32,966 bases of DNA, taken from contig NIVC01003677.1 in the NCBI GenBank assembly GCA_002269645.1, positions 50,374 to 83,339 of the forward strand, in the 5' to 3' direction. Within the stretch, counting starts at the first letter, position 1. Each line of letters starts with the position of its first letter. This document shows positions 3,456-31,382 of this stretch, piece by piece. This DNA comes from Macrostomum lignano. Its lineage: Eukaryota. Below the pieces are notes generated by a model, which was not told where the DNA came from, searched no databases, and was given only the letters and a program-made list of their open reading frames with translations. The translations under genes and the position numbers were made by a program.

Positions 3456-4704
3456 GTCAGTCAGTCAGTCAGTCAGTCAGTCAGTCAGTCAGTCAGTCAG
3501 TCAGTCAGTCAGTCAGTCAGTCAGTCAGTCAGTCAGTCAGTCAGTCAGTCAGTCAGTCAGTCAGTCAGTCAGTCAGTCAGTCAGTCAGTCAGTCAGTCAG
3601 TCAGTCAGTCAGTCAGTCAGTCAGTCAGTCAGTCAGTCAGTCAGTCAGTCAGTCAGTCAGTCAGTCAGTCAGTCAGTCAGTCAGTCAGTCAGTCAGTCAG
3701 TCAGTCAGTCACCCACTCACTCAAGTCAGTCAGTCAGTCAGTCACCCACTCACTCAAGTCAGTCAGTCAGTCAGTCAGTCAGTCAGTCACCCACTCACTC
3801 AAGTCAGTCAGTCAGTCAGTCAGTCAGTCAGTCAGTCAGTCAGTCAGTCACCCACTCACTCAAGTCAGTCAGTCAGTCAGTCAGTCAGTCAGTCAGTCAG
3901 TCACCCACTCACTCAAGTCAGTCAGTCAGTCAGTCAGTCAGTCAGTCAGTCAGTCAGTCAGTCAGTCAGTCAGTCAGTCAGTCAGTCAGTCAGTCAGTCA
4001 GTCAGTCAGTCAGTCAATCAGTCACCCACTCACTCAAGTCAGTCAGTCAGTCAGTCACCCACTCACTCAAGTCAGTCAGTCAGTCAGTCAGTCAGTCAGT
4101 CACCACTCACTCAAGTCAGTCAGTCAGTCAGTCAGTCAGTCAGTCAGTCAGTCAGTCAGTCACCCACTCACTCAAGTCAGTCAGTCAGTCAGTCACCCAC
4201 TCACTCAAGTCAGTCAGTCAGTCAGTCAGTCAGTCAGTCAGTCAGTCAGTCAGTCAGTCAGTCAGTCAGTCAGTCAGTCAGTCAGTCAGTCAGTCAGTCA
4301 GTCAGTCACCCACTCACTCAAGTCAGTCAGTCAGTCAGTCAGTCAGTCAGTCAGTCAGTCAGTCAGTCAGTCAGTCAGTCAGTCAGTCAGTCAGTCAGTC
4401 AGTCAGTCAGTCAGTCAGTCAGTCAGTCAGTCAGTCAGTCAGTCAGTCAGTCAGTCACCCACTCACTCAAGTCAGTCAGTCAGTCAGTCAGTCAGTCAGT
4501 CAGTCAGTCAGTCAGTCAGTCAGTCAGTCAGTCAGTCAGTCAGTCAGTCAGTCAGTCAGTCAGTCAGTCAGTCAGTCAGTCATTCAGTCAGTCACAGTCA
4601 GTCAGTCAGTCAGTCAGTCAGTCAGTCAGTCAGTCAGTCAGTCAGTCAGTCAGTCAGTCAGTCAGTCAGTCAGTCAGTCAGTCAGTCAGTCAGTCAGTCA
4701 GTCA
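3456..4704. repeat. (CAGT)n tetranucleotide array, ~1.25 kb, with recurrent CCCACTCACTCAAG interruptions
   Basis: Read directly; about a dozen copies of the interrupting variant at irregular spacing. Confidence 0.98.
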
Positions 4705-8736: not shown

Positions 8737-9463
8737 GTGGTGTTTGTCAGCAACGATCGGTGCAACTCTCGGGGTTTTATCGGCGTTTACTACGACGTAC
8801 TTTGATCGGCTTTCCAGTATGTTTTGACGGTGCCAGACGCGCCTCCGTCATCATAATTTTTCTGGACCACATTTTGGTAGCTCGTGGTAGTGCCTCTCAG
8901 CGGCAAATTAGGACTTCCTCAGAGTCTGTATCGCAAAGCACCAAAACCGTTTAGGGTCAACTTCACCAACTTTAAATCTTTTGTGAATGTCTTTTAATTC
9001 AAGAAGGAATACGGGCACAGGGTCACAGGGGAATGATATTCTGCGACAGGTAAACTGCTGCTGACACTCTCCTTACAGGCAAAGTTCCCTAACAGTAGAA
9101 CGTAGACCGTAGAAAATAATATCAAAACCAGACAAAAAAGTGTTATTACTCAGAATTTAATTTGTGCAGCATTGTACATCATTAGTACGATTCGCTGGCT
9201 CGTTTGAAGGCGATGTAAAGGGAGTAAAGTTTTTTAAACCTTTTAATTTTCAAATAAATGTATTCTCAGTGCTGGCGATTAAACTAGCCCATAATCTACA
9301 TCGATAGCGGGGCTCAAACGAATAGAAATTTACAGTAAAGCACGCACAGATTATGGCACAGCACAGCCAGTACGATTTAGGTACAAAAGCGAATCGCCAT
9401 TGGTCTAAAAAATAAAGCCCTACATCTATTGGTTGATTCATCCACGGTAGCGGGATAAAGGGC

Positions 9464-9470
9464 TATAAAA
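9464..9470 (+). promoter_or_regulatory. TATA box of WSC-PAN gene copy 2
   Basis: TATAAAA 70 nt upstream of ATG 9534; context conserved with copy 1. Confidence 0.65.
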
Positions 9471-9533
9471 CCCTTTCGCTTATTTGCGTCTCATAGCGCA
9501 TCTCGGCTTCCAGTTTTGGCGTCCCTAGTAGTC

Positions 9534-10228
9534 ATGGCCGACACGCCTTGCCTACCGGTTTTTCTCTGTGCCCTGCTCGCCTGCGTGGCCGGCAGGTTCG
9601 TTCACTTCTCCTACGTGGGCTGCTATGTTGACTATATTGACGGAACGCGAGATATGAAAGGTAATAATTTGAATAGCCCCGATGAAATGTCGCTTGAGAT
9701 CTGCAGCGCCATCTGCTCTCTGGACAGCTTTCTGTATTTCGGTGTGCAGTTTTCTTCTCAGTGCTTCTGCGACAGCTCCTTCGGGTCGCAGGGAAAGGGA
9801 GAAGAGAGCGAATGCAACAGGCCGTGCAGTGGAAACTCGAGTCAAATCTGCGGAGGTGGAGGTCGCAACGCGGTTTATGCTCTGAGCTACCCTGGTCAGT
9901 AACTGAGTTGTTTTATATTTCATCTGCAATGAGCATCCAAGACAAGCCATAAATCAGCTGCGATTCATTGAGACTTGAAAATTCAGTTTCAGACTGGAAC
10001 AGCTACACGGTGGTGAAGCCAAGCAACCTGACGGTCACATTCAAGAGAACCCGCTATAATCTTGTCGCTGCCCAGTCTGACGCGGACTGCCTGCTCCAGT
10101 GCAGCGCCAGAGCCGACTGCCAGGCCGCCGTTTTCTCCAAGCGGCTGCTCGCCTGCCGCCTGCTGGACTTTGTCTACCCGCCAGCCAGTCTGACTGGACC
10201 CGACTGGACTCTCTTCGTGCGTGGCTGA
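9534..10228 (+). CDS. Secreted WSC-domain + PAN/apple-like protein, 198 aa (exon 1 9534-9894, phase-1 intron 9895-9992, exon 2 9993-10228)
   Basis: Signal-peptide-like MADTPCLPVFLCALLACVAG. WSC signature YVGCYVD...MSLEICSAIC...YFGVQFSSQCFC...ECNRPCSGNSSQICGG...NAVY. Donor G|GTCAGT and acceptor tttcag join the exons in frame (YP-DWNS). Exon 2 has CLLQCSARADCQAAVF...CRL, a PAN/apple-like Cys pattern. Confidence 0.88.
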
Positions 10229-10495: not shown

Positions 10496-10832
10496 AGTCA
10501 GTCAGTCAGTCAGTCAGTCAGTCAGTCAGCTAGTCAGTCAGTCAGTCAGTCAGTCAGTCAGTCAGTCAGTCAGTCAGTCAGTCAGTCAGTCAGTCAGTCA
10601 GTCAGTCAGTCAGTCAGTCAGTCAGTCAGTCAGTCAGTCAGTCAGTCAGTCAGTCACCCACTCACTCAAGTCAGTCAGTCAGTCAGTCAGTCAGTCAGTC
10701 AGTCAGTCAGTCAGTCAGTCAGTCAGTCAGTCAGTCAGTCAGTCAGTCAGTCAGTCAGTCAGTCAGTCAGTCAGTCAGTCAGTCAGTCAGTCAGTCAGTC
10801 AGTCAGTCAGTCAGTCAGTCAGTCAGTCAGTC
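10496..10832. repeat. (CAGT)n array, ~335 bp
   Basis: Read directly; same position relative to the gene as 3456-4704; one CCCACTCACTCAAG interruption. Confidence 0.98.
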
Positions 10833-17287: not shown

Positions 17288-20103
17288 AGTTGTAAAAATT
17301 ATGGTTTCTGCTGATGAAGTGATTAATTTTGTTCAATAAAGTCAGCATTTTAACGTTAAAAAGAGTAAAAACTGTGAAAAATTGACATGCTTTAAACAAA
17401 AATGCGCAAATTTCTAGTAATTTAGCTTTCAATGAAAATGTCTTGGGTGGAATTCCAACTTGGGCCGGGGTGTGCATATGGAGATCAGTGTGTGACTCAT
17501 TCCTGCTCGAAAGCTGTCTCTTGCCAACTTTGAAATCAGCATTTGGACAAATTAGCGGTTGAAATTATGGCTTTTGGGATGAAACTACTAAGTTTGATCA
17601 ATTCGCATTTCGCATTTTAACGTTAGAAAATAATAAAACTGTGAAAATTGGCCTTTATTAAACGAAAGAATGAGAAATTCTAAGAATTAGCTTTAAAAAA
17701 AACGATGGCTTTAGTGGAAATTGGACTGGCTCGGGTAATCCGTGTGCGATTATAATTCCTGCTCAAAGCTGTCTCAGAGTTCCAGAAGTAGCATTTGTGA
17801 TAATTTTGTGTTAAAATTGTGGTTTTTAGTGATGAAACTACTGATTTTGATCAATAAAGTCTGCATTTTAACGTAAAAAATGCGTAAAAACTGTGAAAAT
17901 TTGTATTTTCTTATGAAAAAATGCTCATTTCTAGCAATTTAGGCTTCAATAGCCATGTCTTTGGTTGATTCTGGGGTGGCTTGTGGATGTTCGTGGGGGT
18001 TCATTCCTGCTTCAAAGCTGTCTAAGGTCAAGTTGAAAGCGACATTTGGACAAATTAGTTGTTGAAAGTATGGTTTCTAGTGATGAAACTACTGATTTTG
18101 ATCAATAAAGTCTGCATTTTAACGTAAAAAATGCATAAAAACTGTGAAAATTTGTATTTTCTTATGAAAAAAATGCGCATTTCTAGCAATTTAGGCTTCA
18201 ATAGCCATGTCTTTGGATGATTTTGGGCTGGCTTGTGGATGTTTGTGTGGAATTCATTCCTGCTTAAAAGCTGTCTAAGGTCAAGTTGAAAGCGACATTT
18301 GGACAAATTAGCTGTTGAAAGTATGGTTTCTAGTGATGAAACTACTGATTTTGATCAATAAAGTCTGCATTTTAACGTAAAAAATGCATAAAAACTGTGA
18401 AAAATTGTATTTTCTTATGAAAAAATGTGCATTTCTAGTCATTTAGCTTTCAAAATAACCAAATTTCTTGTTTGAAATTCCAACTTTACTTTGTATGGAG
18501 AGGTCAGTGCATGATTCATTCCTGCTTCTAACAGATTAAACCGTCTCAAAGACCAAGTCTGAAAGCTTGAAGTGAGAAGGCAGGGGAGAGGCAGAATTGA
18601 ATAGCCTCACGTATTTAAATTTGTGGACTTCACTACTTCTAGTAAACGCAAGGGTGACTTATACTATTTACAAAGTTTAGATCAAGTAAATCAGAATTGC
18701 ATGCGGTGGAGACACTGATTCATAGGCTGTGTACATTTACAAATGCAGCTGGGGTTTGTCAATGCAGGTAGAGGTTGGCGGACTCATGATTTGCTCAGAT
18801 TCGCGGGGTTGATGTGTGCATTAAAAGTTGGTTTCTTGCTATCTGGGGCGGCATGGATGACGTAATCGGAGAAGAGAGGGGTTTTGCTGAATGAAGTTTA
18901 ATATAGGGTCTGTGCTGTGGAAAGATCTGTCTGTACACTGAAAATGGAGAGAGGGTCGAAATTCCTTGGCATTTAGAAGGGGGACAGAGAGAACAGGGCG
19001 AGTGTTAAAATTTAGCTCGATTTTGCTATGGGGTCTGCGCTGTGAAGACGAGTCTGGTGAACATCGGAGGGGTGGCTGTTTTCGAACAGGGTTGAATTTG
19101 ACTATGGTCCGAGTTAAAGGGTGATTCAGCATTCAGTATAGGAGCTTCGAAGGGATGGTTTACTGTAATTAAAGCGCGACGATGCTTCTTGTATCATACC
19201 CACTGTCAATAGAAATATAAAGCACTGCTTCAACACAGTCTTGTATTTGGGGGGCAGACTTGGGAGAGACTTGAATGACGCAACCTCCACCCCATTGCTT
19301 GGCGAGAATTTGTACAGGCCCGCCTCTATATGAAAGTATGTGTATTTTATAAGTGATTTCGAATAAATTATCAGCATATTCAAACCTACATTCTCCGAGG
19401 GTGAAAATGTACATTATACCTAATTTTTTGGGTATGTAGCAGATATGAGTATAGGCTATCGATGTACATATAGGCTCCGACCAGTATTATTCAAATCTGT
19501 CTCTGAGAATGTACATTGGAAATATACATTACGATGTGAGCTATACAATTAGTTGACTCATTTGGATGAGATTGTACATGTAGTAGGGTTTCGAGTTGTA
19601 ATTTTGGTGCGCGCGCGCTGGGGATGACACTGTAGATTAATGCACATGTACATATAGAATTGGGGATAGACATGGACAATTTGAGTTAGGGATTAATGTA
19701 CATGGAATTAATACATATCCAATTTGAGATACTTAGGGATTAATGTACATGGAATTAATATGAACACATGGATTATTACGACTAAATATTGCCATATCAC
19801 GCTTAGGATAGCGTTTTTGTATACTACTTACTTCATTTTCAGTGGGGATAGACATGGACATTTGAGATATGGATTAATGTACATGGGAATAATGTACATA
19901 TCCAATTTGAGATATTTAGGGATTAATGTACATGGAATTAATGTACATATATGAGCACATGGATTATTACGACTACATATTGCCATATCACGCTTAGGAT
20001 AGCGTTTTTGTATACTACTTACTTCATTTTCAGATAGTAGTATAATTTGCGTTTTTTTGCGTCAGAATTCTGAAAACCCGGCAGATTTGGCGCGATACGT
20101 AGT
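17288..20103 (-). repeat. Right arm of the long inverted repeat (2816 bp)
   Basis: Reverse complement of 12371-15184; the 250-bp unit continues a little further (to ~17200) on this side. Confidence 0.95.
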
Positions 20104-23812: not shown

Positions 23813-24880
23813 CAACTCGACGATTTCTGCATAGCTGCCCGGGACTACGAGGTCTGCCTGCAGCTGCACAATTTTCTGCTGGTCACCCTGCAGCGCCTCG
23901 GCTTTGAGATCAACTGGGCCAAGACGCAGAGCCCAGCCACTTCGGTCACTTTCCTGGGTGTGCAGATCGACACATTGACTGGCCTGCTGTCACTGCCCGC
24001 CGAGAAGATGGACGGCCTTCGAGAACTTCTCCAGGACTGCGCCAACTCGAAGAGCCTGCAAAAACGTCGCCTTCAGCACCTAGTCGGCAAACTGAACTGG
24101 TTCTGCAAAGTGGCCAAACCTGCAAAGGCCCTGCTTCGCGCGCTCCTGGAGATAACCATCGCTATTCCTGAGCAGCATCATCGAGTACCGGTGCGCGGCG
24201 AGCTACTGGCCCAGTTGCAGTTCTGGCAGCATGCAATCCCAGTGTTCCCGACCGACAAGCTGTGGCGGCGTGCACGAGTGCTGGCAGCGGTCGAGACGGA
24301 CGCCTGCGTCAGTTCCGGTGGCATGATCCTGAGCACCTCTGATGGCCAGCGCGAGTTCCGCCTCGTCGACTTCTGCAGTGACGCCGGTGGATCTTCATGA
24401 GCGAGCACATCAACGCCAAGGAGATGGTACTGCCGCTGCTCGCCATCATTCTGTTCCAGGAGCAGCTGGCCGGCGGCAAGGTGGCCTGCTAAGTCGACAG
24501 CAGCGCGGCGGTCGGCACCATCAACCGCGGTGCCTCCAGCAACCCGATCGTCATGACCCTGCTCAAAACGGCCACTCTGGCAGCGCTGAGGCACGACTTT
24601 CAGTTTCGAGCTCACCATATGCCGGGGTCCTGGCAGCTGCTGAGCGACCCACTGTCGCGCTGCCTGACGCATCCCCGCCACATGCTGCTGTTTCTGCTGC
24701 GCTACTTCGGCCGGGCCAAGGCGCAGCCGGAAGATCTGCGCAGGGCCTGCCTCAATGAGTCAACGGCGGCCCGGTTGCTTGAGCAGGCGTCGCTCGCGCT
24801 GAGCCCCGGTCTCTGGCGCGGTTCTCGAGCGGAGCGAGTTGCGACGGCTGAAGCAGATCCCGAGCTCAGGTACGAGTCTT
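23813..24880 (+). mobile_element. Decayed DIRS/Ngaro-type tyrosine-recombinase retrotransposon: C-terminal RT + RNase H + start of the recombinase N-terminal region
   Basis: LDDF at 23816-23827, LQRLGFEINWAK, VTFLGVQID, LQHLVGKLNW; RNase H motifs ETDAC, HINAKE, VDSSAAV, SDPLSR. Frameshift near 24389 and stop at 24490-24492. 5'-truncated at the RT catalytic motif; recombinase catalytic domain absent. Confidence 0.88.
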
Positions 24881-24987
24881 AGAGCTATTGCTTGGACCTG
24901 GCTTTTTTAGCTTGGTTTAATTTTTTCTGCGGCTCGTTGATTTGATTTTACACGCTTGTCTCCTTCCTCCCTCTTTCTGTTGGTGTT

Positions 24988-25393
24988 GGGGTTCGTTTTC
25001 CCTTTCTGGGCCGCGTCTGCCGGTCTTTTGTGCCACTTGCTTTTACTCTGCGTTAGTCTTTTGGGGTTTAATACGTCAGTTTGAGGCAGGTATCTGACTC
25101 TAACTGGTTTTAAACCCCCCCCGCGCCGGCCCGGCCTCGCTTTGGTGGGTTGGTGGGGTGCTGGTGCTCTGCGTGCGTGCAGGGCTTAGGGCAGCCTCCC
25201 CCCGCTCTGTGCTATTTAGTCACGCGTCGCGGCCGCTGAGTCGGCGTAATTTTGGCAAAATATTTTTTTCTCTTTTAAATTACAAAATCAATATATTTCG
25301 TCGCTTAAGGGGTTCGTTTTCCCTTTCTGGGCCGCGTCTGCCGGTCTTTTGTGCCACTTGCTTTTTCTCTGCGTTAGTCTTTTGGGGTTTAAT
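24988..25393 (+). repeat. 85-bp direct repeat (24988-25072 and 25309-25393, one mismatch) flanking a 236-bp spacer
   Basis: ggggttcgttttccctttctgggccgcgtctgccggtcttttgtgccacttgctttt(a/t)ctctgcgttagtcttttggggtttaat occurs twice. Confidence 0.9.
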
Positions 25394-26860: not shown

Positions 26861-27148
26861 GCAGTTTATTAATTTAATATTTGTGTAAAAAGTCTTCAAA
26901 GTAAAACAAATTTACAAACGCCTATAAACAGGCGTTATCTATAATTGTCCCAACAGTTGTCAATAGTAAATTTTTTATGGTTTGAATGTTAAAATCATAT
27001 ATACCGCTCTCACAGAAATTCATCAGATTTTGAACCGCTAAGAAAAAATGTAAGGATTAAAATATAGCCACTGGTAGCTACAATATAAGCAATTAAACCT
27101 ATTCAGTCACCACAATAGTCAAATTGATAAACTGCCTCTGCGTAGATT

Positions 27149-28611
27149 TTACAACCGCATTTTTTGAAGAAGTTCCGTCACCTGAACCCTGCAGTCATTC
27201 GTTGTTTGGTTCCTAGCTGAATTGGCTTGTTGGCGCGATTCACGACTGCTTTGAGGAGGCTCATTGACTCGAATCCAAAATTTCTTGCTTGTCTGCACAG
27301 ACCACCAGGGCAGCTGGCTGATGCCCAGATTAAAAGTGGCGTTTTGCACCACATAATTAACGATAGGAACCATTGATGCAATGTCGCACTTGTCGGCGAA
27401 CAGGTCGAGAACAGTGCACAGACACTGGATGAACCGACTGCCTCTGTCTGTCATTCGGTAGCTGCTTTCATCCGGCGAAGTCGAGTGAGCGACGATCATG
27501 TCAGGAAAGAACGCCAGCTCTGATTTAGGCCATCGACCAGGGTCTCGACAGTTCTCAAAGATAACCAATTGCTGCTTTCTACTTGTGCGTTTTCCTTTGG
27601 AAATTCTCTTTAGAATTTTACTTTCCTTTGCTGATTCGCCGTCGAAACCAACTACTTCACCGAGACATCCGTGAGACATAAAAGCAACTACGACTGAGCT
27701 GCCGTGTCGTGCGTCACTGCAAAACATGTCTAATTCGCTTTCGATTTCTACTTTGGTGAGATTCGACCTGATGCTCACTGAGTAGCCAAGCCTGAGCAAA
27801 GTGTCAGCCATTCGCTGGCAGTCGTACTGACTTCCGAACCGAGTAGATAGTTCCTTTTTCTGAAAGACAACGTTGTGAACGATGAGGGCTACAGCCTTGC
27901 ACTCTTGAGTGTCTAATCCAGGTGCATTCCATTCGCTTCTGAAAGTCTCTAATCGGAGAGAACCTCTTATTGCTGGTCTCGTCTGCGTGTCGTCACTAAC
28001 GTCAATTGAAGTCAGATTTGGGTGCGATGAACTCTCTTCTATATAAAAGTTTTCAAGCCAAGTGATTCTCTTCCTCCAGCCTGGGTTTTCATCATTGACT
28101 TTGCAGTGCATTATGCCGTGATGGCAGGAATGGCAGGAAAAATCTCTACCAACCACAAAGCTGCCATTGAGAGAGATGTTCTTCCTGGGAGATTCCAGCA
28201 GGGAGTCCAGAAATTCAATCACGCCGCACCGATTCCTGCAAACTCTGACAACGCTGAACTTCTCGGGTAGCTCCTCTGGCATCTGAGTGTTCGCGAAATT
28301 CTCTTCAGACTCGGACACTTCGCAAAGAATAAGCAAAATGCTACTGCTGCACTTTTGAGACGATTGCTGTTTAGAAAGTTCATCGAATATTTCTTGCAAG
28401 ACGTTGTCGTTGCGATGCGTGCGTACAATTAGATAAAGGACAACATTTCCTTCAGTTTCTTTTGGAAGCCTGATGGCTGTCTTGATTGAGCTCGAATTGC
28501 CATCCGTGTAATCGAAGAGCACTTTGAAGGCTGCATACTCCAGAAACATCTGATAGTTTCTGGCCCCATCAAACTGTCCTTCGGTGAGAATCATCACAAA
28601 CCCTGTTCGAT
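27149..28611 (-). CDS. Exon 4: degenerate caspase fold + caspase (peptidase C14A-like) domain with intact His/Cys
   Basis: AVALIVHN...TRFGSQYDCQRMADTLLRLGYSV...VVVAFMSHG (His 27673-27671)...LVIFENCR (Cys 27550-27548)...DMIVAHST...SYRMTDRGSRFIQCLCTVL...QLP. Confidence 0.93.
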
Positions 28612-31382
28612 CTGAAATTAAAAAGTGCAAGTACGGCTGAGCTTTGCTGAGATTATCGAGTTTTATTGACTCATGCAAGCAAAGTTGTTCTTTAATACAT
28701 GAATCTAATAATGTTTATAACTCAAGCGTATCTTTCTGAAATACATGTACTTATCAGAAGGTTTTTAGATGAAATAATTCTTCATAGGATAAAAATGTTT
28801 GGACATCGCAGAAAAAAACGGAACAGATACCAGTATAATTAGAAGTGAGTAGTCTTGCAAAGATGTTGCACATAGCTTTATATGGCTATAACGCATGAAT
28901 CGGATCTCTACGTCGTAAGAGGTGTTTCTCGATAATTTAATATGCCACTTACCAATTCTGGCGCTTTTAGGTTCTTTAGATTTCTTCTCTAGACTTTGTT
29001 TAGGTTCTTTAGATTTCTTCTGTAGACTTTGTTGCGAAACCTCCTGACCGGTAGCTAAAAGCAAAATAGTGCAAATGATTATGCAATAATGATTTCTGCA
29101 TAGTTGTAACTTTTCAATTTCGACTTTGGCAAAAGTGAACAATTTTGACAACAACAAGGAGAGACTGAAGACGACTAGTGAAGTACCTCGACATAAATGT
29201 AAACACGGCCAAAGCAGTCAATCACAGATTTGTCATTCAAGATTGTATTGTTTAAAGGCAACTAGAAGGAACCGTTAGGTCAAAATTTACACCACCAGTG
29301 TCGCGCCCTAACACCAAAAAATGTTGGCGGTGGCACAAGCAGTCTGAGCTACAGAACTACAATGATATTGATCACAAAGAATTTTAAGTCACTTTGACAG
29401 TAACAGTGACAGTCATAATTTATCGTGTTGCCGAAGTTGAAGTCACTTTTGGCAAAGTTCGAATTGAAAAGTATACATGCATTGAGCTAAAAAAAGTGCT
29501 CTTACCCTGGATTCCGTCTGTTCCCATGATATAAAAGAGCTTGCCAGTCTGAATAAACCACTTGGGCACAGATTCATCTAGTCGTTTGTGCTCATTAATT
29601 ATGGTAATCATAGAGGCCACGTCCTCTGTGTGCCCATACTGTCTGAAAGTTTCGCACAGTGTCTGAATAAAAGCGCTGCCCTCTGCTCTTGTCACATCGC
29701 TACTAACTGATCGACCGAACACCATGCCGCTGTGTGGATGAACCTTGATGGTTGAATCATGCTTGCGAAAATAGGCCTGCAAACCGTCCACAGCATCTTC
29801 AATGATCTCATAAGTATTGCTGCTGAAACCATCAGTAACAGAGTCTGTCTGCAGTGTTGTGACATCCCACTCGTGCAGAATAAAGAGTCGGGGCTTGGCC
29901 TCGAGCTTTTCGCCAATAGCCAAGCTTTTGTACAAATTCATGACAGTAGAGCTGCTCAGCTGCTGCTGCGTCTGGGACAGCACGACAAGGATGCAGGAGT
30001 CACCGTGTTCAGTATCTTCTGAAAAAAGCTCGATCCTTCTTTTCAAGGCGTCATTGGAGCGGGTTTGCACGTCCGTTACAATGTAGCCAAGATTTTTTAG
30101 CATACGCATAACTCTGCTGCGGTCAACTTGCAGAGCAGAGTATAGAGAGTCTCCTCGGTCATAGTTGATGATGACCAACGCTCGAGGCTTTTTCGGATTG
30201 CGCCGATTCGGATAGATTATTGAGGCATTCTCGCGCATCCAATCAGTCGGTTTGTCTTGAGCAGCCTGCTCTGATGCTGCTGGTAAGGCATCAACTTCAT
30301 CAAGGTTGCTCTTGGGTTCCCTGATAAATTTGAAAATGTCGCGCAGGAAATCTCCACCGAGCTTTCCTTCTCTATGATACAGAGAAAGGGACTCGTAAGC
30401 GAGTGGTAGCTTCAATGCCGTCTCCAGGATAGAAAATATACTTTTAGTCTCCCAACTGCACCTGCAGTCATCCAGAAAGCTTCTATAGAAGCCCTGTACG
30501 CTTTTAGTTTCCTTAGCCACGACGTAAGCGATAGTTGTACACTTGTATTTAAAATTCGCATTCGAAAATTCGTTTGCAAGTTTCGTGTCATCCGGGCTTT
30601 CTTCACCAGCGCGACAAAATAATAAACATCTGTTTTGGCAGTTGGGAAATGTACCCATTGTCATGAAATCTAGGACGTCCTTCATGAAAGCATTGCCAGC
30701 TATCACGACTACAATTAGCTGCTGGACCTCGGAATTGTTCACGAAGTCGGATAGACACGAGCCCAGTTTGCTTTCATACTGCTGTTCCAGGCTCCTCTTT
30801 ACGTTAAAACTGCACTCTTTTAGAAAGTCGGCGTACTCATCTGTCACTGACTCACTGCCAGCGTCGAAGAACAGAGCCAATCTTCGGGAACCTTAAATAT
30901 CATTATTTGGCAGAGGGTTTTTCATAGTTGGTTATTCAACAAGGGATCAGCGGGTTTTCATTGCTATTGTAGCTTAGTTAAGTTCTATAACTCTAGTAGT
31001 AAGGGTCGCCGCTCTGAGCAAAGCAGAAATAGCTACAGGATTCTACTTGAAACTACCAGTCTCAACAGTGTAAAATCTGTACATCGCGTATTTTAGTTCG
31101 TTTGCAAGGAAAAATTTTAGCAAAACTTGTTGTAAAACTTACATAGTTCATCTTCAAATTTGAAATCATCGGCAGAACTACTTTCAAGAAGAGCTGAAAA
31201 GCAATAATAAAGACAACAGTGCGGTAGTGTTAACCTTCCTTTCGTAAAGTTCAGAAGAATGAGCTTAAAGTTCGACAGGTAAAAACTCTTCTATGGGAAT
31301 TTAAACTACATTCATCATTCAAAAAAGACCTACTTGACGGTCTTAAGCGTATAATTTTTTTCACGTCGGTGACCTCGCTCAT
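27149..31382 (-). CDS. Predicted 999-aa protein with four caspase-fold domains; exons 31382-31334, 30891-29506, 29054-28953, 28611-27149
   Basis: Donors GTAGGT (31333), GTAAGA (29505), GTAAGT (28952); acceptors atttaag (30892), gcttttag (29055), aatttcag (28612). All three introns are phase 1 and the frame is kept: 49+1386+102+1463 = 3000 nt. In-frame TAA 27 nt upstream of ATG 31382. Confidence 0.72.
28953..29054 (-). CDS. Exon 3: 102-nt Lys-rich linker with an internal 33-nt duplication
   Basis: ATGQEVSQ-QSLQKKSKEPK-QSLEKKSKEPK-SARI, bounded by a strong acceptor and a GTAAGT donor, both phase 1. Confidence 0.7.
29506..30891 (-). CDS. Exon 2: two catalytically dead caspase-fold domains
   Basis: PRALVIINY...DRSRVMRMLKNLGYIV...HGDSCILVVLSQT (His to Gln)...KPRLFILHEW (QAC lost)...GSAFIQTLCETF. 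The N-terminal half also follows caspase secondary-structure order. The ORF reads on to a stop at 29420 if the donor is skipped. Confidence 0.88.

What the first reader, a model, noticed from the sequence alone, without database searches (positions are those of the whole stretch)
27149..31382. One spliced gene encoding four tandem caspase-fold domains (three pseudo, one catalytic)
Seen: the two long ORFs and two short exons join through three canonical phase-1 GT-AG introns into an exact 3000-nt CDS (999 aa). D2 and D4 are obvious caspase domains. Inferred by manual alignment: the N-terminal halves of both big exons also follow the caspase fold. D1: RLALFF / DEYADFLKECSFNV / LIVVVIAG / FMKDVLDFM / FPNCQNRCLLFC / CTTIAYV / QGFYRSFLDDC / FLRDIFKF. 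D3: GFVMILT / ARNYQMFLEYAAFKV / VLYLIVRTH / LQEIFDEL / SILLILCE / KFSVVRV / GVIEFLDSLLE / WLENFYI. Only D4 keeps both His826 and Cys867. Established: caspases act as dimers, pseudo-caspases such as c-FLIP tune caspase-8 by heterodimerising, and animal caspases normally have one catalytic domain behind a CARD or DED prodomain. Inference: this chain could be a covalently pre-assembled pseudo/active caspase dimer or tetramer with no death-fold prodomain. I know of no characterised protein with this architecture, but could not search.
Basis: partly seen in the sequence, partly recalled or inferred. Interest (0 to 1): 0.92.

Follow-up and report, generated by a model that had tools for sequence, protein, structure and literature searches.

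The report
Flatworm caspase with four caspase-fold domains
This flatworm (Macrostomum lignano) gene encodes one protein chain with four caspase-type domains, of which only the last keeps the catalytic residues; it is an unusually extended version of the "dead plus live caspase in one chain" design already known from corals and mammalian caspase-16.

Summary
Including it gives a 1016-aa product that is 100% identical to UniProt A0A1I8GDU4 of Macrostomum lignano, so the gene is already in databases as "CASPASE_P20 domain-containing protein".

Pfam recognises only D2 and D4 as caspase domains. D1 and D3 have no Pfam match and are homologous to each other. AlphaFold2 models of both give caspases, c-FLIP and MALT1 as the top Foldseek matches. 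They also match the family's own caspase domains by profile-profile comparison (P 3.6e-5), above all controls. A TIR reading, suggested by a UniProt name, found no support.

The four-domain layout is shared by three paralogues and arose once. A single-unit relative with an active caspase looks like the ancestral form.

The proposed pre-assembled dimer or tetramer was not tested. Coral caspase-X and mammalian caspase-16 are two-domain precedents. My verdict is a new variant of a known kind, of moderate interest.

The parts
31334..31382 (-). Exon 1, from the ATG to the phase-1 donor (MSEVTDVKKIIRLRPS + 1 nt)
   Evidence: Its N-terminus is identical to P0001, P0006 and P0008.
31143..31193 (-).
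   Evidence: Acceptor TTTTCAG and donor GTAAGT. Present in the UniProt and GenBank models P0001 and P0005-P0008.
29506..30891 (-). Exon encoding D1 and D2, the first unit (cryptic pseudo-caspase X1 plus pseudo-caspase)
30323..30889 (-). D1 (X1), aa 18-206 of the 999-aa model. A cryptic caspase-fold domain with no His; it keeps the Cys of LLFCRAG at the position of QACRG.
   Evidence: No Pfam match. The AlphaFold2 model's top Foldseek matches are caspase-6, caspase-3, drICE and c-FLIP, at E 3e-3 and TM 0.50-0.56. hhalign.
29525..30193 (-). D2, aa 250-472. A recognisable caspase domain with His replaced by Gln (LSQT) and Cys by Trp (HEWD), so a pseudo-caspase.
   Evidence: PF00656 E 3.7e-12; alignment; residues.
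28953..29054 (-). Linker exon of 34 aa, Lys/Ser/Gln-rich, with an internal repeat QSL(Q/E)KKSKEPK
   Evidence: The junctions are present in P0005/PAA47018.1.
27149..28611 (-). Exon encoding D3 and D4 plus the C-terminal tail and the stop codon (27151-27149)
28034..28609 (-). D3 (X3), aa 514-705. A cryptic caspase-fold domain homologous to D1.
   Evidence: hhalign D1-type against D3-type: probability 96.7%, P 3.6e-10. For the AlphaFold2 model, the 24 Foldseek matches at E <= 0.001 are all caspases, c-FLIP or MALT1, with best E 3.4e-5 and TM up to 0.63.
27263..27907 (-). D4, aa 748-962. The only domain with the catalytic pair: His826 (27673-27671) and Cys867 (27550-27548). The S1 arginines are present, but Glu865 replaces the usual Gln.
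   Evidence: PF00656 E 2.9e-31. Caspase-3 in PDB, E 1e-12..
26865..26883 (-). ATTAAA/AATAAA signals about 280 nt after the stop codon, likely the poly(A) signal
   Evidence: motif only, not verified with reads

Best explanation
The locus is one copy of a Macrostomum lignano gene that exists as several near-identical copies. It is already deposited as an uncharacterised 1016-aa "CASPASE_P20 domain-containing protein". Its product is built from two homologous units, each of the form cryptic pseudo-caspase (X) followed by a caspase domain, joined by a flexible Lys/Ser-rich linker: X1, pseudo-caspase D2, linker, X3, active caspase D4.

Shown here:
- The exon structure.
- The homology of unit 1 to unit 2.
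- The loss of His and Cys in D2, and their retention in D4 together with both S1 arginines.
- The caspase-like predicted fold of X.
- A single origin of the four-domain layout before paralogues A, B, C and D diverged.
- The existence of a single-unit relative (X plus active caspase).

Inferred history: a caspase domain duplicated to give X-caspase, as in coral caspase-X and caspase-16. That unit then duplicated in tandem and fused, and the first unit's caspase domain died.

Inferred mechanism, not tested: D4 is an Asp-directed cysteine protease. Its activity depends on pairing with a caspase-fold partner, and the three dead domains in the same chain provide or compete for that pairing, as c-FLIP(L) does with procaspase-8. 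Activation would then be controlled within the chain rather than through recruitment by CARD, DED or death domains, of which the protein has none.
For: - Exon join and residues.
- Identity with UniProt and GenBank models of M. lignano. The GenBank annotation derives from RNA-seq (PMC5730564).
- Pfam caspase matches on D2 and D4. PDB caspase-3 match to D4, E 1e-12.
- Unit-to-unit alignment, with the acceptor site at the same position and phase in both units.
- X domain: D1-type against D3-type hhalign P 3.6e-10. X against the family's caspase domains scores 38.6, P 3.6e-5, in register over all secondary-structure elements. Reversed and shuffled controls score at most 23.7, TIR 18.8 and CheY 12.2.
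- AlphaFold2 and Foldseek: the top matches are caspases, c-FLIP and MALT1 for both X models, and no TIR appears in the top 50. The predicted order of elements, beta1-alpha1-beta2-alpha2-beta3-alpha3-beta4-loop-beta5-alpha4-alpha5-beta6, is that of caspases.
- A nearly invariant Cys follows beta4 in X (LLFCRAG against QACRG).
- Paralogues B (P0011, 1017 aa) and C share the four-domain layout. D is X-pseudo-active, and E (P0014) is X-active.
- The D2-type domains form a clade (99/98), and so do the D3-type domains (100/99).
- Eight copies have intact open frames.
- Precedents for pairing within one chain: PMC4715348 and PMC12198278.
Against: - The fold assignment of X rests on shallow alignments of 9-11 sequences from one species, and on models of medium confidence (pLDDT 70-72, with the C-terminal part including the putative beta6 below 50-60).
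- Foldseek E-values are modest: 3e-3 for D1 and 3.4e-5 for D3.
- X does not match Pfam PF00656. It does not match a single human caspase-3 sequence by hhalign (P 0.23). A profile search of PDB gives a caspase only at E 0.74.
- No inter-domain packing was modelled.
- No reads were mapped here. Some database models of other copies are shorter, for example P0019, which holds D4 only.
- This window's allele has Glu instead of the S1-pocket Gln (ENCRD), so its activity on Asp substrates is uncertain.
- Ka/Ks for D1 and D2 between copies is 0.6-0.9, so constraint on the first unit is weak.
Confidence: 0.7

Rival explanations
1. D1 and D3 are not caspase-derived. They are a generic three-layer alpha/beta domain (TIR-like, or flavodoxin/CheY-like) fused in front of each caspase domain, making the architecture TIR-like, caspase, TIR-like, caspase.
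For: UniProt names a fragment of paralogue B (P0010, A0A1I8IZE5) "TIR domain-containing protein". TIR-caspase fusions are reported in an annelid (PMC11463336). The X profile's best PDB sequence match is a designed Rossmann 2x3 protein (E 2e-4). CheY-like receivers appear lower in the Foldseek list for D1.
Against: No Pfam TIR match to P0010, P0009 or any X domain at E <= 10. A PF01582 scan of the whole genome does not hit this locus. hhalign of X against two M. lignano TIR domains scores 18.8, P 0.03, and against CheY 12.2, compared with 38.6 against caspase domains. No TIR structure is in the top 50 Foldseek matches of either model. CheY-like matches have TM about 0.37, against 0.5-0.63 for caspases.
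Confidence: 0.15
2. These are two separate two-domain genes (D1-D2 and D3-D4). They are co-transcribed or merged by annotation, and the mature mRNAs are separated by spliced-leader trans-splicing or polyadenylation. The four-domain protein would then be a modelling artefact.
For: About 7% of M. lignano assembled transcripts are polycistronic precursors (PMC5730564). Some database models are clearly chimeric: P0009 fuses genes A and B, and P0006 runs onto the antisense strand of a WSC exon. P0019 models D4 alone for one copy.
Against: The D2-linker-D3 join uses canonical GT..AG sites and stays in frame. The same join is present in the TBONE-processed GenBank models of three paralogues: P0005, P0011 (full length, 1017 aa) and P0013. 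The second unit has no Met ahead of its first beta-strand in A, B or C. No AATAAA or ATTAAA lies between the D2 exon and the linker exon. The layout has been kept at 30-43% identity between paralogues.
Confidence: 0.1
3. The locus is a decaying member of a recently amplified family and has no protease function. On this reading all four domains are effectively dead in this allele.
For: This allele has Glu865 in place of the conserved S1 Gln. Ka/Ks for D1 and D2 is 0.6-0.9. One copy (C4582) is frameshifted. Paralogue B is absent next to this copy.
Against: All five exons are open with intact splice sites. Three contigs carry identical copies, and eight copies have open frames. Ka/Ks for D3 and D4 is 0.26-0.5. 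His, Cys and both S1 arginines are retained.
Confidence: 0.05

Closest known systems
Coral caspase-X (Acropora millepora AmCaspase Xa-Xd; PMC4715348)
   Same: One chain holds an N-terminal caspase domain lacking His and Cys, followed by a typical active caspase domain. It has no CARD, DED or death domain and is a lineage-restricted expanded family. The inactive domain was shown to dampen killing, and modelling suggests pairing within the chain through beta6 strands, as in c-FLIP with procaspase-8. The same paper mentions an unverified four-caspase-domain prediction in A. digitifera.
   Different: Caspase-X has two domains, and both are recognisable by Pfam. Here there are four. Two of them (X1, X3) are so diverged that no Pfam model in the library (including PF00656) and no PDB sequence search identifies them as caspase. 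There is no detectable sequence relationship beyond the shared caspase family, so the origin is independent (a flatworm-only family).
Mammalian caspase-16 (PMC12198278)
   Same: Its prodomain is predicted to fold like a caspase domain, arose by duplication of caspase exons, and has lost the catalytic site. The C-terminal domain is active, and pairing within the chain like caspase-8 with FLIP(L) has been proposed.
   Different: It has a single unit of two domains and is vertebrate-specific. Here the two-domain unit itself was duplicated and fused, giving three dead domains and one live domain.
c-FLIP(L) with procaspase-8 heterodimer
   Same: A pseudo-caspase that lacks His and Cys pairs with and regulates an active caspase domain. 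c-FLIP structures (3h11, 3h13) are among the top Foldseek matches of X1 and X3.
   Different: c-FLIP and caspase-8 are two separate chains brought together by DEDs. Here the partners are covalently linked and there is no death-fold domain.
Bivalve caspases with two CASc domains (Mytilus coruscus; PMC10967218)
   Same: The caspase domain is duplicated within one predicted protein in a lophotrochozoan.
   Different: They have two domains only, they are predictions, and no relation to the X domain has been shown.

Membership tests
Caspase family (MEROPS C14A / Pfam PF00656), domain D4 | Significant match to the caspase domain profile | tested here: met
   PF00656 E 2.9e-31, 109 bits against a cut-off of 21.4. 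Caspase-3 in PDB, E 1e-12.
Caspase family (MEROPS C14A / Pfam PF00656), domain D4 | Catalytic His (SHG) and Cys (QACxG-type pentapeptide) | tested here: met
   His826 in SHG and Cys867 in ENCRD. The Gln of the pentapeptide is Glu in this allele and Gln in other copies.
Caspase family (MEROPS C14A / Pfam PF00656), domain D4 | S1-pocket arginines for a P1 Asp (caspase-3 Arg64 and Arg207) | tested here: met
   STRFGS and SYRMT align with TSRSGT and SWRNS of caspase-3 (alignment).
Caspase family (MEROPS C14A / Pfam PF00656), domain D4 | Asp-directed peptidase activity | not testable with these tools
   Needs an enzyme assay.
Pseudo-caspase (caspase domain without catalytic pair), domain D2 | Caspase profile match with His and Cys replaced | tested here: met
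   PF00656 E 3.7e-12. LSQT in place of SHG and HEWD in place of QACR. The same losses occur in paralogues B, C and D.
Caspase-hemoglobinase fold, domains D1 and D3 (X) | Sequence-profile match to caspase models | tested here: inconclusive
   No Pfam match at E <= 10. PDB profile search gives a caspase only at E 0.74. hhalign against the family's own caspase domains gives P 3.6e-5 and probability 71.5%, above all controls. Against a single human caspase-3 sequence, P is 0.23.
Caspase-hemoglobinase fold, domains D1 and D3 (X) | Predicted structure superposes best on caspase-fold structures | tested here: met
   D1: the top matches are caspase-6, caspase-3, drICE and c-FLIP, E 3e-3, TM 0.50-0.56. 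D3: the 24 matches at E <= 0.001 are all caspases, c-FLIP or MALT1, TM up to 0.63. Model confidence is medium.
Caspase-hemoglobinase fold, domains D1 and D3 (X) | Catalytic His/Cys pair | tested here: not met
   A Cys after beta4 is nearly invariant. D1-type domains have no His after beta3. D3-type domains have a His displaced by 1-2 residues. They are therefore pseudo-enzymes at best.
TIR domain (PF01582 / PF13676), for D1 and D3 | Profile or structural match to TIR | tested here: not met
   P 0.03; no TIR in the top 50.
Tandem pseudo-plus-active caspases (coral caspase-X / caspase-16 type) | An inactive caspase-fold domain N-terminal to an active one in the same chain, supported by cDNA | tested here: met
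   Domain order. Transcript-derived GenBank models. No reads were inspected directly.
Tandem pseudo-plus-active caspases (coral caspase-X / caspase-16 type) | Pairing within the chain through the beta6/alpha5 dimer interface | not tested
Initiator caspases with a death-fold prodomain (CARD/DED) | A CARD, DED or death domain N-terminal to the protease | tested here: not met
   No such Pfam match anywhere in the 999 aa at E <= 10.

The most novel reading that the evidence does not exclude
The chain folds into a single-chain mimic of a caspase oligomer. Each X domain pairs with its neighbouring caspase domain, and the dead first unit docks on the live second unit. This would give an enzyme with one active site whose activation needs no death-fold platform, and is instead set by rearrangement or cleavage within the chain. 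The expanded Macrostomum-only family (genes A to F) would then be a distinct, platform-independent caspase signalling system, possibly used in immunity or in cell turnover during regeneration.
Probability: 0.25. Interest if true: 0.7.

Novelty: new variant of a known kind. Interest (0 to 1): 0.55.

Why it matters
Caspases are switched on by pairing of two caspase-fold domains, and how dead partners tune live ones (c-FLIP, caspase-16, coral caspase-X) is still being worked out. This family supplies natural single-chain constructs with 1:1 (gene E), 2:1 (gene D) and 3:1 (genes A, B, C) ratios of dead to live domains. It does so in a flatworm where transgenesis works, so the role of dead caspase domains could be tested by deletion in vivo. 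It also shows that caspase-fold domains can diverge beyond the reach of Pfam models, which means multi-caspase-domain proteins are probably under-counted. A recent survey of lophotrochozoan caspases did not report this architecture (PMC11463336).

Tried and rejected
- TIR hypothesis for D1 and D3, prompted by a UniProt name. Rejected after the Pfam search, the whole-genome PF01582 scan, hhalign and Foldseek.
- Profile search of X against 1.84 billion proteins. It found only M. lignano paralogues plus one spurious repeat protein, P0016, so it gave no outside relatives and no functional lead.
- Word-based homologue search with D4. It returned only a M. lignano D4-only model, so I could not build an independent, diverse caspase profile.
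- Looking for paralogue B downstream in the window. It is absent.
- Literature search for the Mlig gene identifiers. No hits, so there is no expression information.
- Looking for model coordinates in order to check strand order and the position of the Cys. They are not available.
Full report
**What is in the sequence**

The window is DNA of Macrostomum lignano, a free-living flatworm. The encoded protein is 95-100% identical to UniProt and GenBank entries of that species.

Joined, they give exactly 3000 nt and 999 aa without a stop, through three GT..AG introns, all in phase 1. The two long ORFs are real.

One correction is needed. It has a strong acceptor (TTTTCAG) and donor (GTAAGT) and keeps the reading phase. 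Including it gives a 1016-aa product that is letter for letter UniProt A0A1I8GDU4 (P0008). None of the database models retrieved here joins exon 1 directly to exon 2.

A likely poly(A) signal lies about 280 nt after the stop codon. No such signal lies between the D2 exon and the linker exon.

**One gene or two**

The predicted D2-linker-D3 junctions (…TDGIQ|ATGQEV…SARI|DRTGF…) occur exactly in the retrieved models. These include GenBank PAA47018.1 (P0005). The GenBank annotation of this genome was made from a genome-guided RNA-seq transcriptome that was cut at trans-splice and poly(A) sites (PMC5730564).

Paralogue B has a full 1017-aa four-domain GenBank model (P0011). Paralogue C has a model running from D2 to D4 (P0013). 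In A, B and C the second big exon has no Met ahead of its first beta-strand. I did not inspect reads myself.

Some models of this family are plainly chimeric or partial:
- P0009 fuses genes A and B.
- P0006 runs onto the antisense strand of a WSC exon 17 kb away.
- P0019 holds D4 only.

A two-gene reading keeps about 10% of my confidence.

**The domains**

Pfam PF00656 matches D2 (E 3.7e-12) and D4 (E 2.9e-31). D4 matches caspase-3 structures at E 1e-12. It has SHG, the catalytic Cys and both S1 arginines. D2 has Gln in place of the His and Trp in place of the Cys.

D1 and D3, together called X here, match nothing in Pfam, even at E <= 10.

Aligning the two halves of the protein and its paralogues shows that each half is one unit, X followed by a caspase domain, and the units align end to end. 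The splice acceptor sits at the same position and phase in front of both X domains. D1-type and D3-type X domains are clearly homologous (hhalign 96.7%, P 3.6e-10).

**What is X**

A UniProt name for a fragment of paralogue B, "TIR domain-containing protein", raised a rival reading, so I tested both ideas.

AlphaFold2 on a nine-sequence alignment with D1 first gave pLDDT 70 and pTM 0.73. An eleven-sequence alignment with D3 first gave pLDDT 72 and pTM 0.76.

Foldseek against PDB gave these results:
- D1: the top matches are caspase-6, caspase-3, drICE and the c-FLIP(L) protease-like domain (E 3e-3, TM 0.50-0.56). CheY-like receivers follow at TM about 0.37.
- D3: all 24 matches at E <= 0.001 are caspases, c-FLIP or MALT1 paracaspase (best E 3.4e-5, TM up to 0.63).

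No TIR structure appears in either top 50. The predicted order of elements, including two helices and a final strand after beta5, is the caspase order.

At the sequence level:

| hhalign comparison | Result |
|---|---|
| X profile against the family's own caspase domains | score 38.6, P 3.6e-5, probability 71.5%, in register along the whole domain |
| Reversed, column-shuffled and block-shuffled controls | score at most 23.7, P at least 0.0095 |
| Two M. lignano TIR domains | score 18.8, P 0.03 |
| CheY | score 12.2 |

In the alignment with the family's caspase domains, a nearly invariant Cys of X (LLFCRAG, LLFCRV, LIFCRI, LLILCEV) falls on the catalytic Cys position of QACRG. D1-type domains have no His after beta3, and D3-type domains have one displaced by one or two residues.

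Weak points remain. X does not match a single human caspase-3 sequence. A PDB sequence-profile search gives a caspase only at E 0.74. The alignments are shallow and come from one species, and the C-terminal third of both models has low confidence.

I put about 75-80% on X being a degenerate caspase-fold domain descended from a caspase domain.

**The family**

The genome holds about eight near-identical open copies of this gene and one frameshifted copy. It also holds:
- a tandem paralogue B, about 2 kb downstream in most copies but not in this window or on contig C217;
- paralogues C and D in tandem on another contig;
- a single-unit gene E (P0014, 580 aa: X plus an active caspase);
- a sixth, more distant member, P0017.

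Gene D (P0012) is X-pseudo-active and has no X3.

A profile search of 1.84 billion proteins found X only in M. lignano. In trees, the D2-type domains of A to D form one clade (99/98) and the D3-type X domains form another (100/99). The four-domain layout therefore arose once, before the paralogues split.

Between copies of gene A, Ka/Ks is 0.26-0.50 for D3 and D4, and 0.63-0.92 for D1 and D2. The second unit is thus under clearer constraint than the first.

**How it probably works**

The shown parts are listed above. The rest is inference from established caspase biology: activity requires pairing of two caspase-fold domains, and c-FLIP(L), a dead paralogue, pairs with and regulates procaspase-8.

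I propose that D4 is the only protease. The three dead domains in the same chain would act as built-in partners or competitors for the pairing surface. Control would then lie within the chain instead of through CARD, DED or death-domain platforms, none of which is present.

The short inter-subunit stretch of D4 fits an enzyme governed by pairing rather than by linker cleavage. This too is inference.

The window's allele has Glu865 where other copies and paralogues have the S1-pocket Gln. Its specificity or activity may therefore differ.

**Comparison with what is known**

The dead-plus-live design in one chain is not new:
- Coral caspase-X has an inactive and an active caspase domain. cDNAs were cloned, the inactive domain reduced killing in HeLa cells, and a beta6-beta6 pairing within the chain was modelled. 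The same paper mentions an unverified four-caspase-domain prediction in Acropora digitifera (PMC4715348).
- Mammalian caspase-16 has a prodomain derived from a duplicated caspase domain, and the same FLIP-like idea was proposed for it (PMC12198278).
- Mytilus has predicted caspases with two CASc domains (PMC10967218).

A survey of lophotrochozoan caspases listed only a kinase-prodomain caspase as unusual in M. lignano and did not report this family (PMC11463336).

What is new here is the four-domain form (three dead, one live), the extreme divergence of two of the dead domains, and the graded family of 1:1, 2:1 and 3:1 members in an animal where transgenesis works.

**Verdict**

The fold claim is upheld by medium-strength evidence, the packing idea is untested, and the novelty claim is overstated.
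- This is a new variant of a known kind, with interest about 0.55.

Noticed in passing
window 27554-27556 (codon of Glu865, minus strand): This allele reads ENCRD where other copies and paralogues read QNCRD, QACR, QCCR or QLCR. The conserved Gln of the caspase S1 pocket is therefore Glu in this copy and in the copy on contig C217, whose sequence matches the window's.
   Followed up: partly
window 9459-9902 (+) and 9555-9776 (-): There is a WSC-domain exon on the plus strand (PF01822, E 6.5e-19). UniProt model A0A1I8J7M5 (P0006) splices the caspase gene's 3' end onto the antisense strand of this exon, which is probably a chimeric gene model.
   Followed up: partly
window 3456-4704 and 10496-10832: Long (GTCA)n tetranucleotide arrays of 310 and 84 copies. 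They create spurious 430-470-aa open frames in three frames.
   Followed up: yes
window 23813-24400 (+), within the 60% G+C stretch 24001-25000: A reverse-transcriptase fragment (RVT_1, E 3.8e-5, below Pfam's cut-off) lies in a G+C-rich island. It is probably a decayed retroelement lying downstream of the caspase gene, in the stretch where other copies carry paralogue B.
   Followed up: partly
window 1-27000; contigs C1547, C896, C4605, C1024, C3259, C4582: The tandem paralogue B follows gene A within about 2 kb on six contigs. It is missing downstream of the copy in this window, and within about 14 kb downstream of the matching copy on C217. This is a structural difference between copies or haplotypes.
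   Followed up: partly
P0010 (UniProt A0A1I8IZE5, fragment of paralogue B): It is named "TIR domain-containing protein" in UniProt, yet no TIR signal was found by Pfam, hhalign or Foldseek. The basis of the name is unexplained.
   Followed up: yes
G000:C4582:1663-2280 (L009-L011): One copy of gene A has its D1 region split over three reading frames, so it is a frameshifted pseudogene copy.
   Followed up: no
window 28953-29054 (linker exon): The linker contains an internal direct repeat QSLQKKSKEPK / QSLEKKSKEPK. Paralogues B and C have linkers of different sequence and length at the same place.
   Followed up: no
window 17809-18453 and 19661-20033: Tandem repeats with periods of 253 bp (2.6 copies) and 191 bp (2 copies) lie in a G-skewed, A+T-rich stretch.
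   Followed up: no
D3-type X domains (window 28034-28609 and paralogues B and C): All three D3-type domains keep a His within one or two residues of the catalytic His position (RTH, KKH, QRH). A and C also keep the Cys after beta4. This is probably a relic, but a residual active site was not excluded.
   Followed up: no
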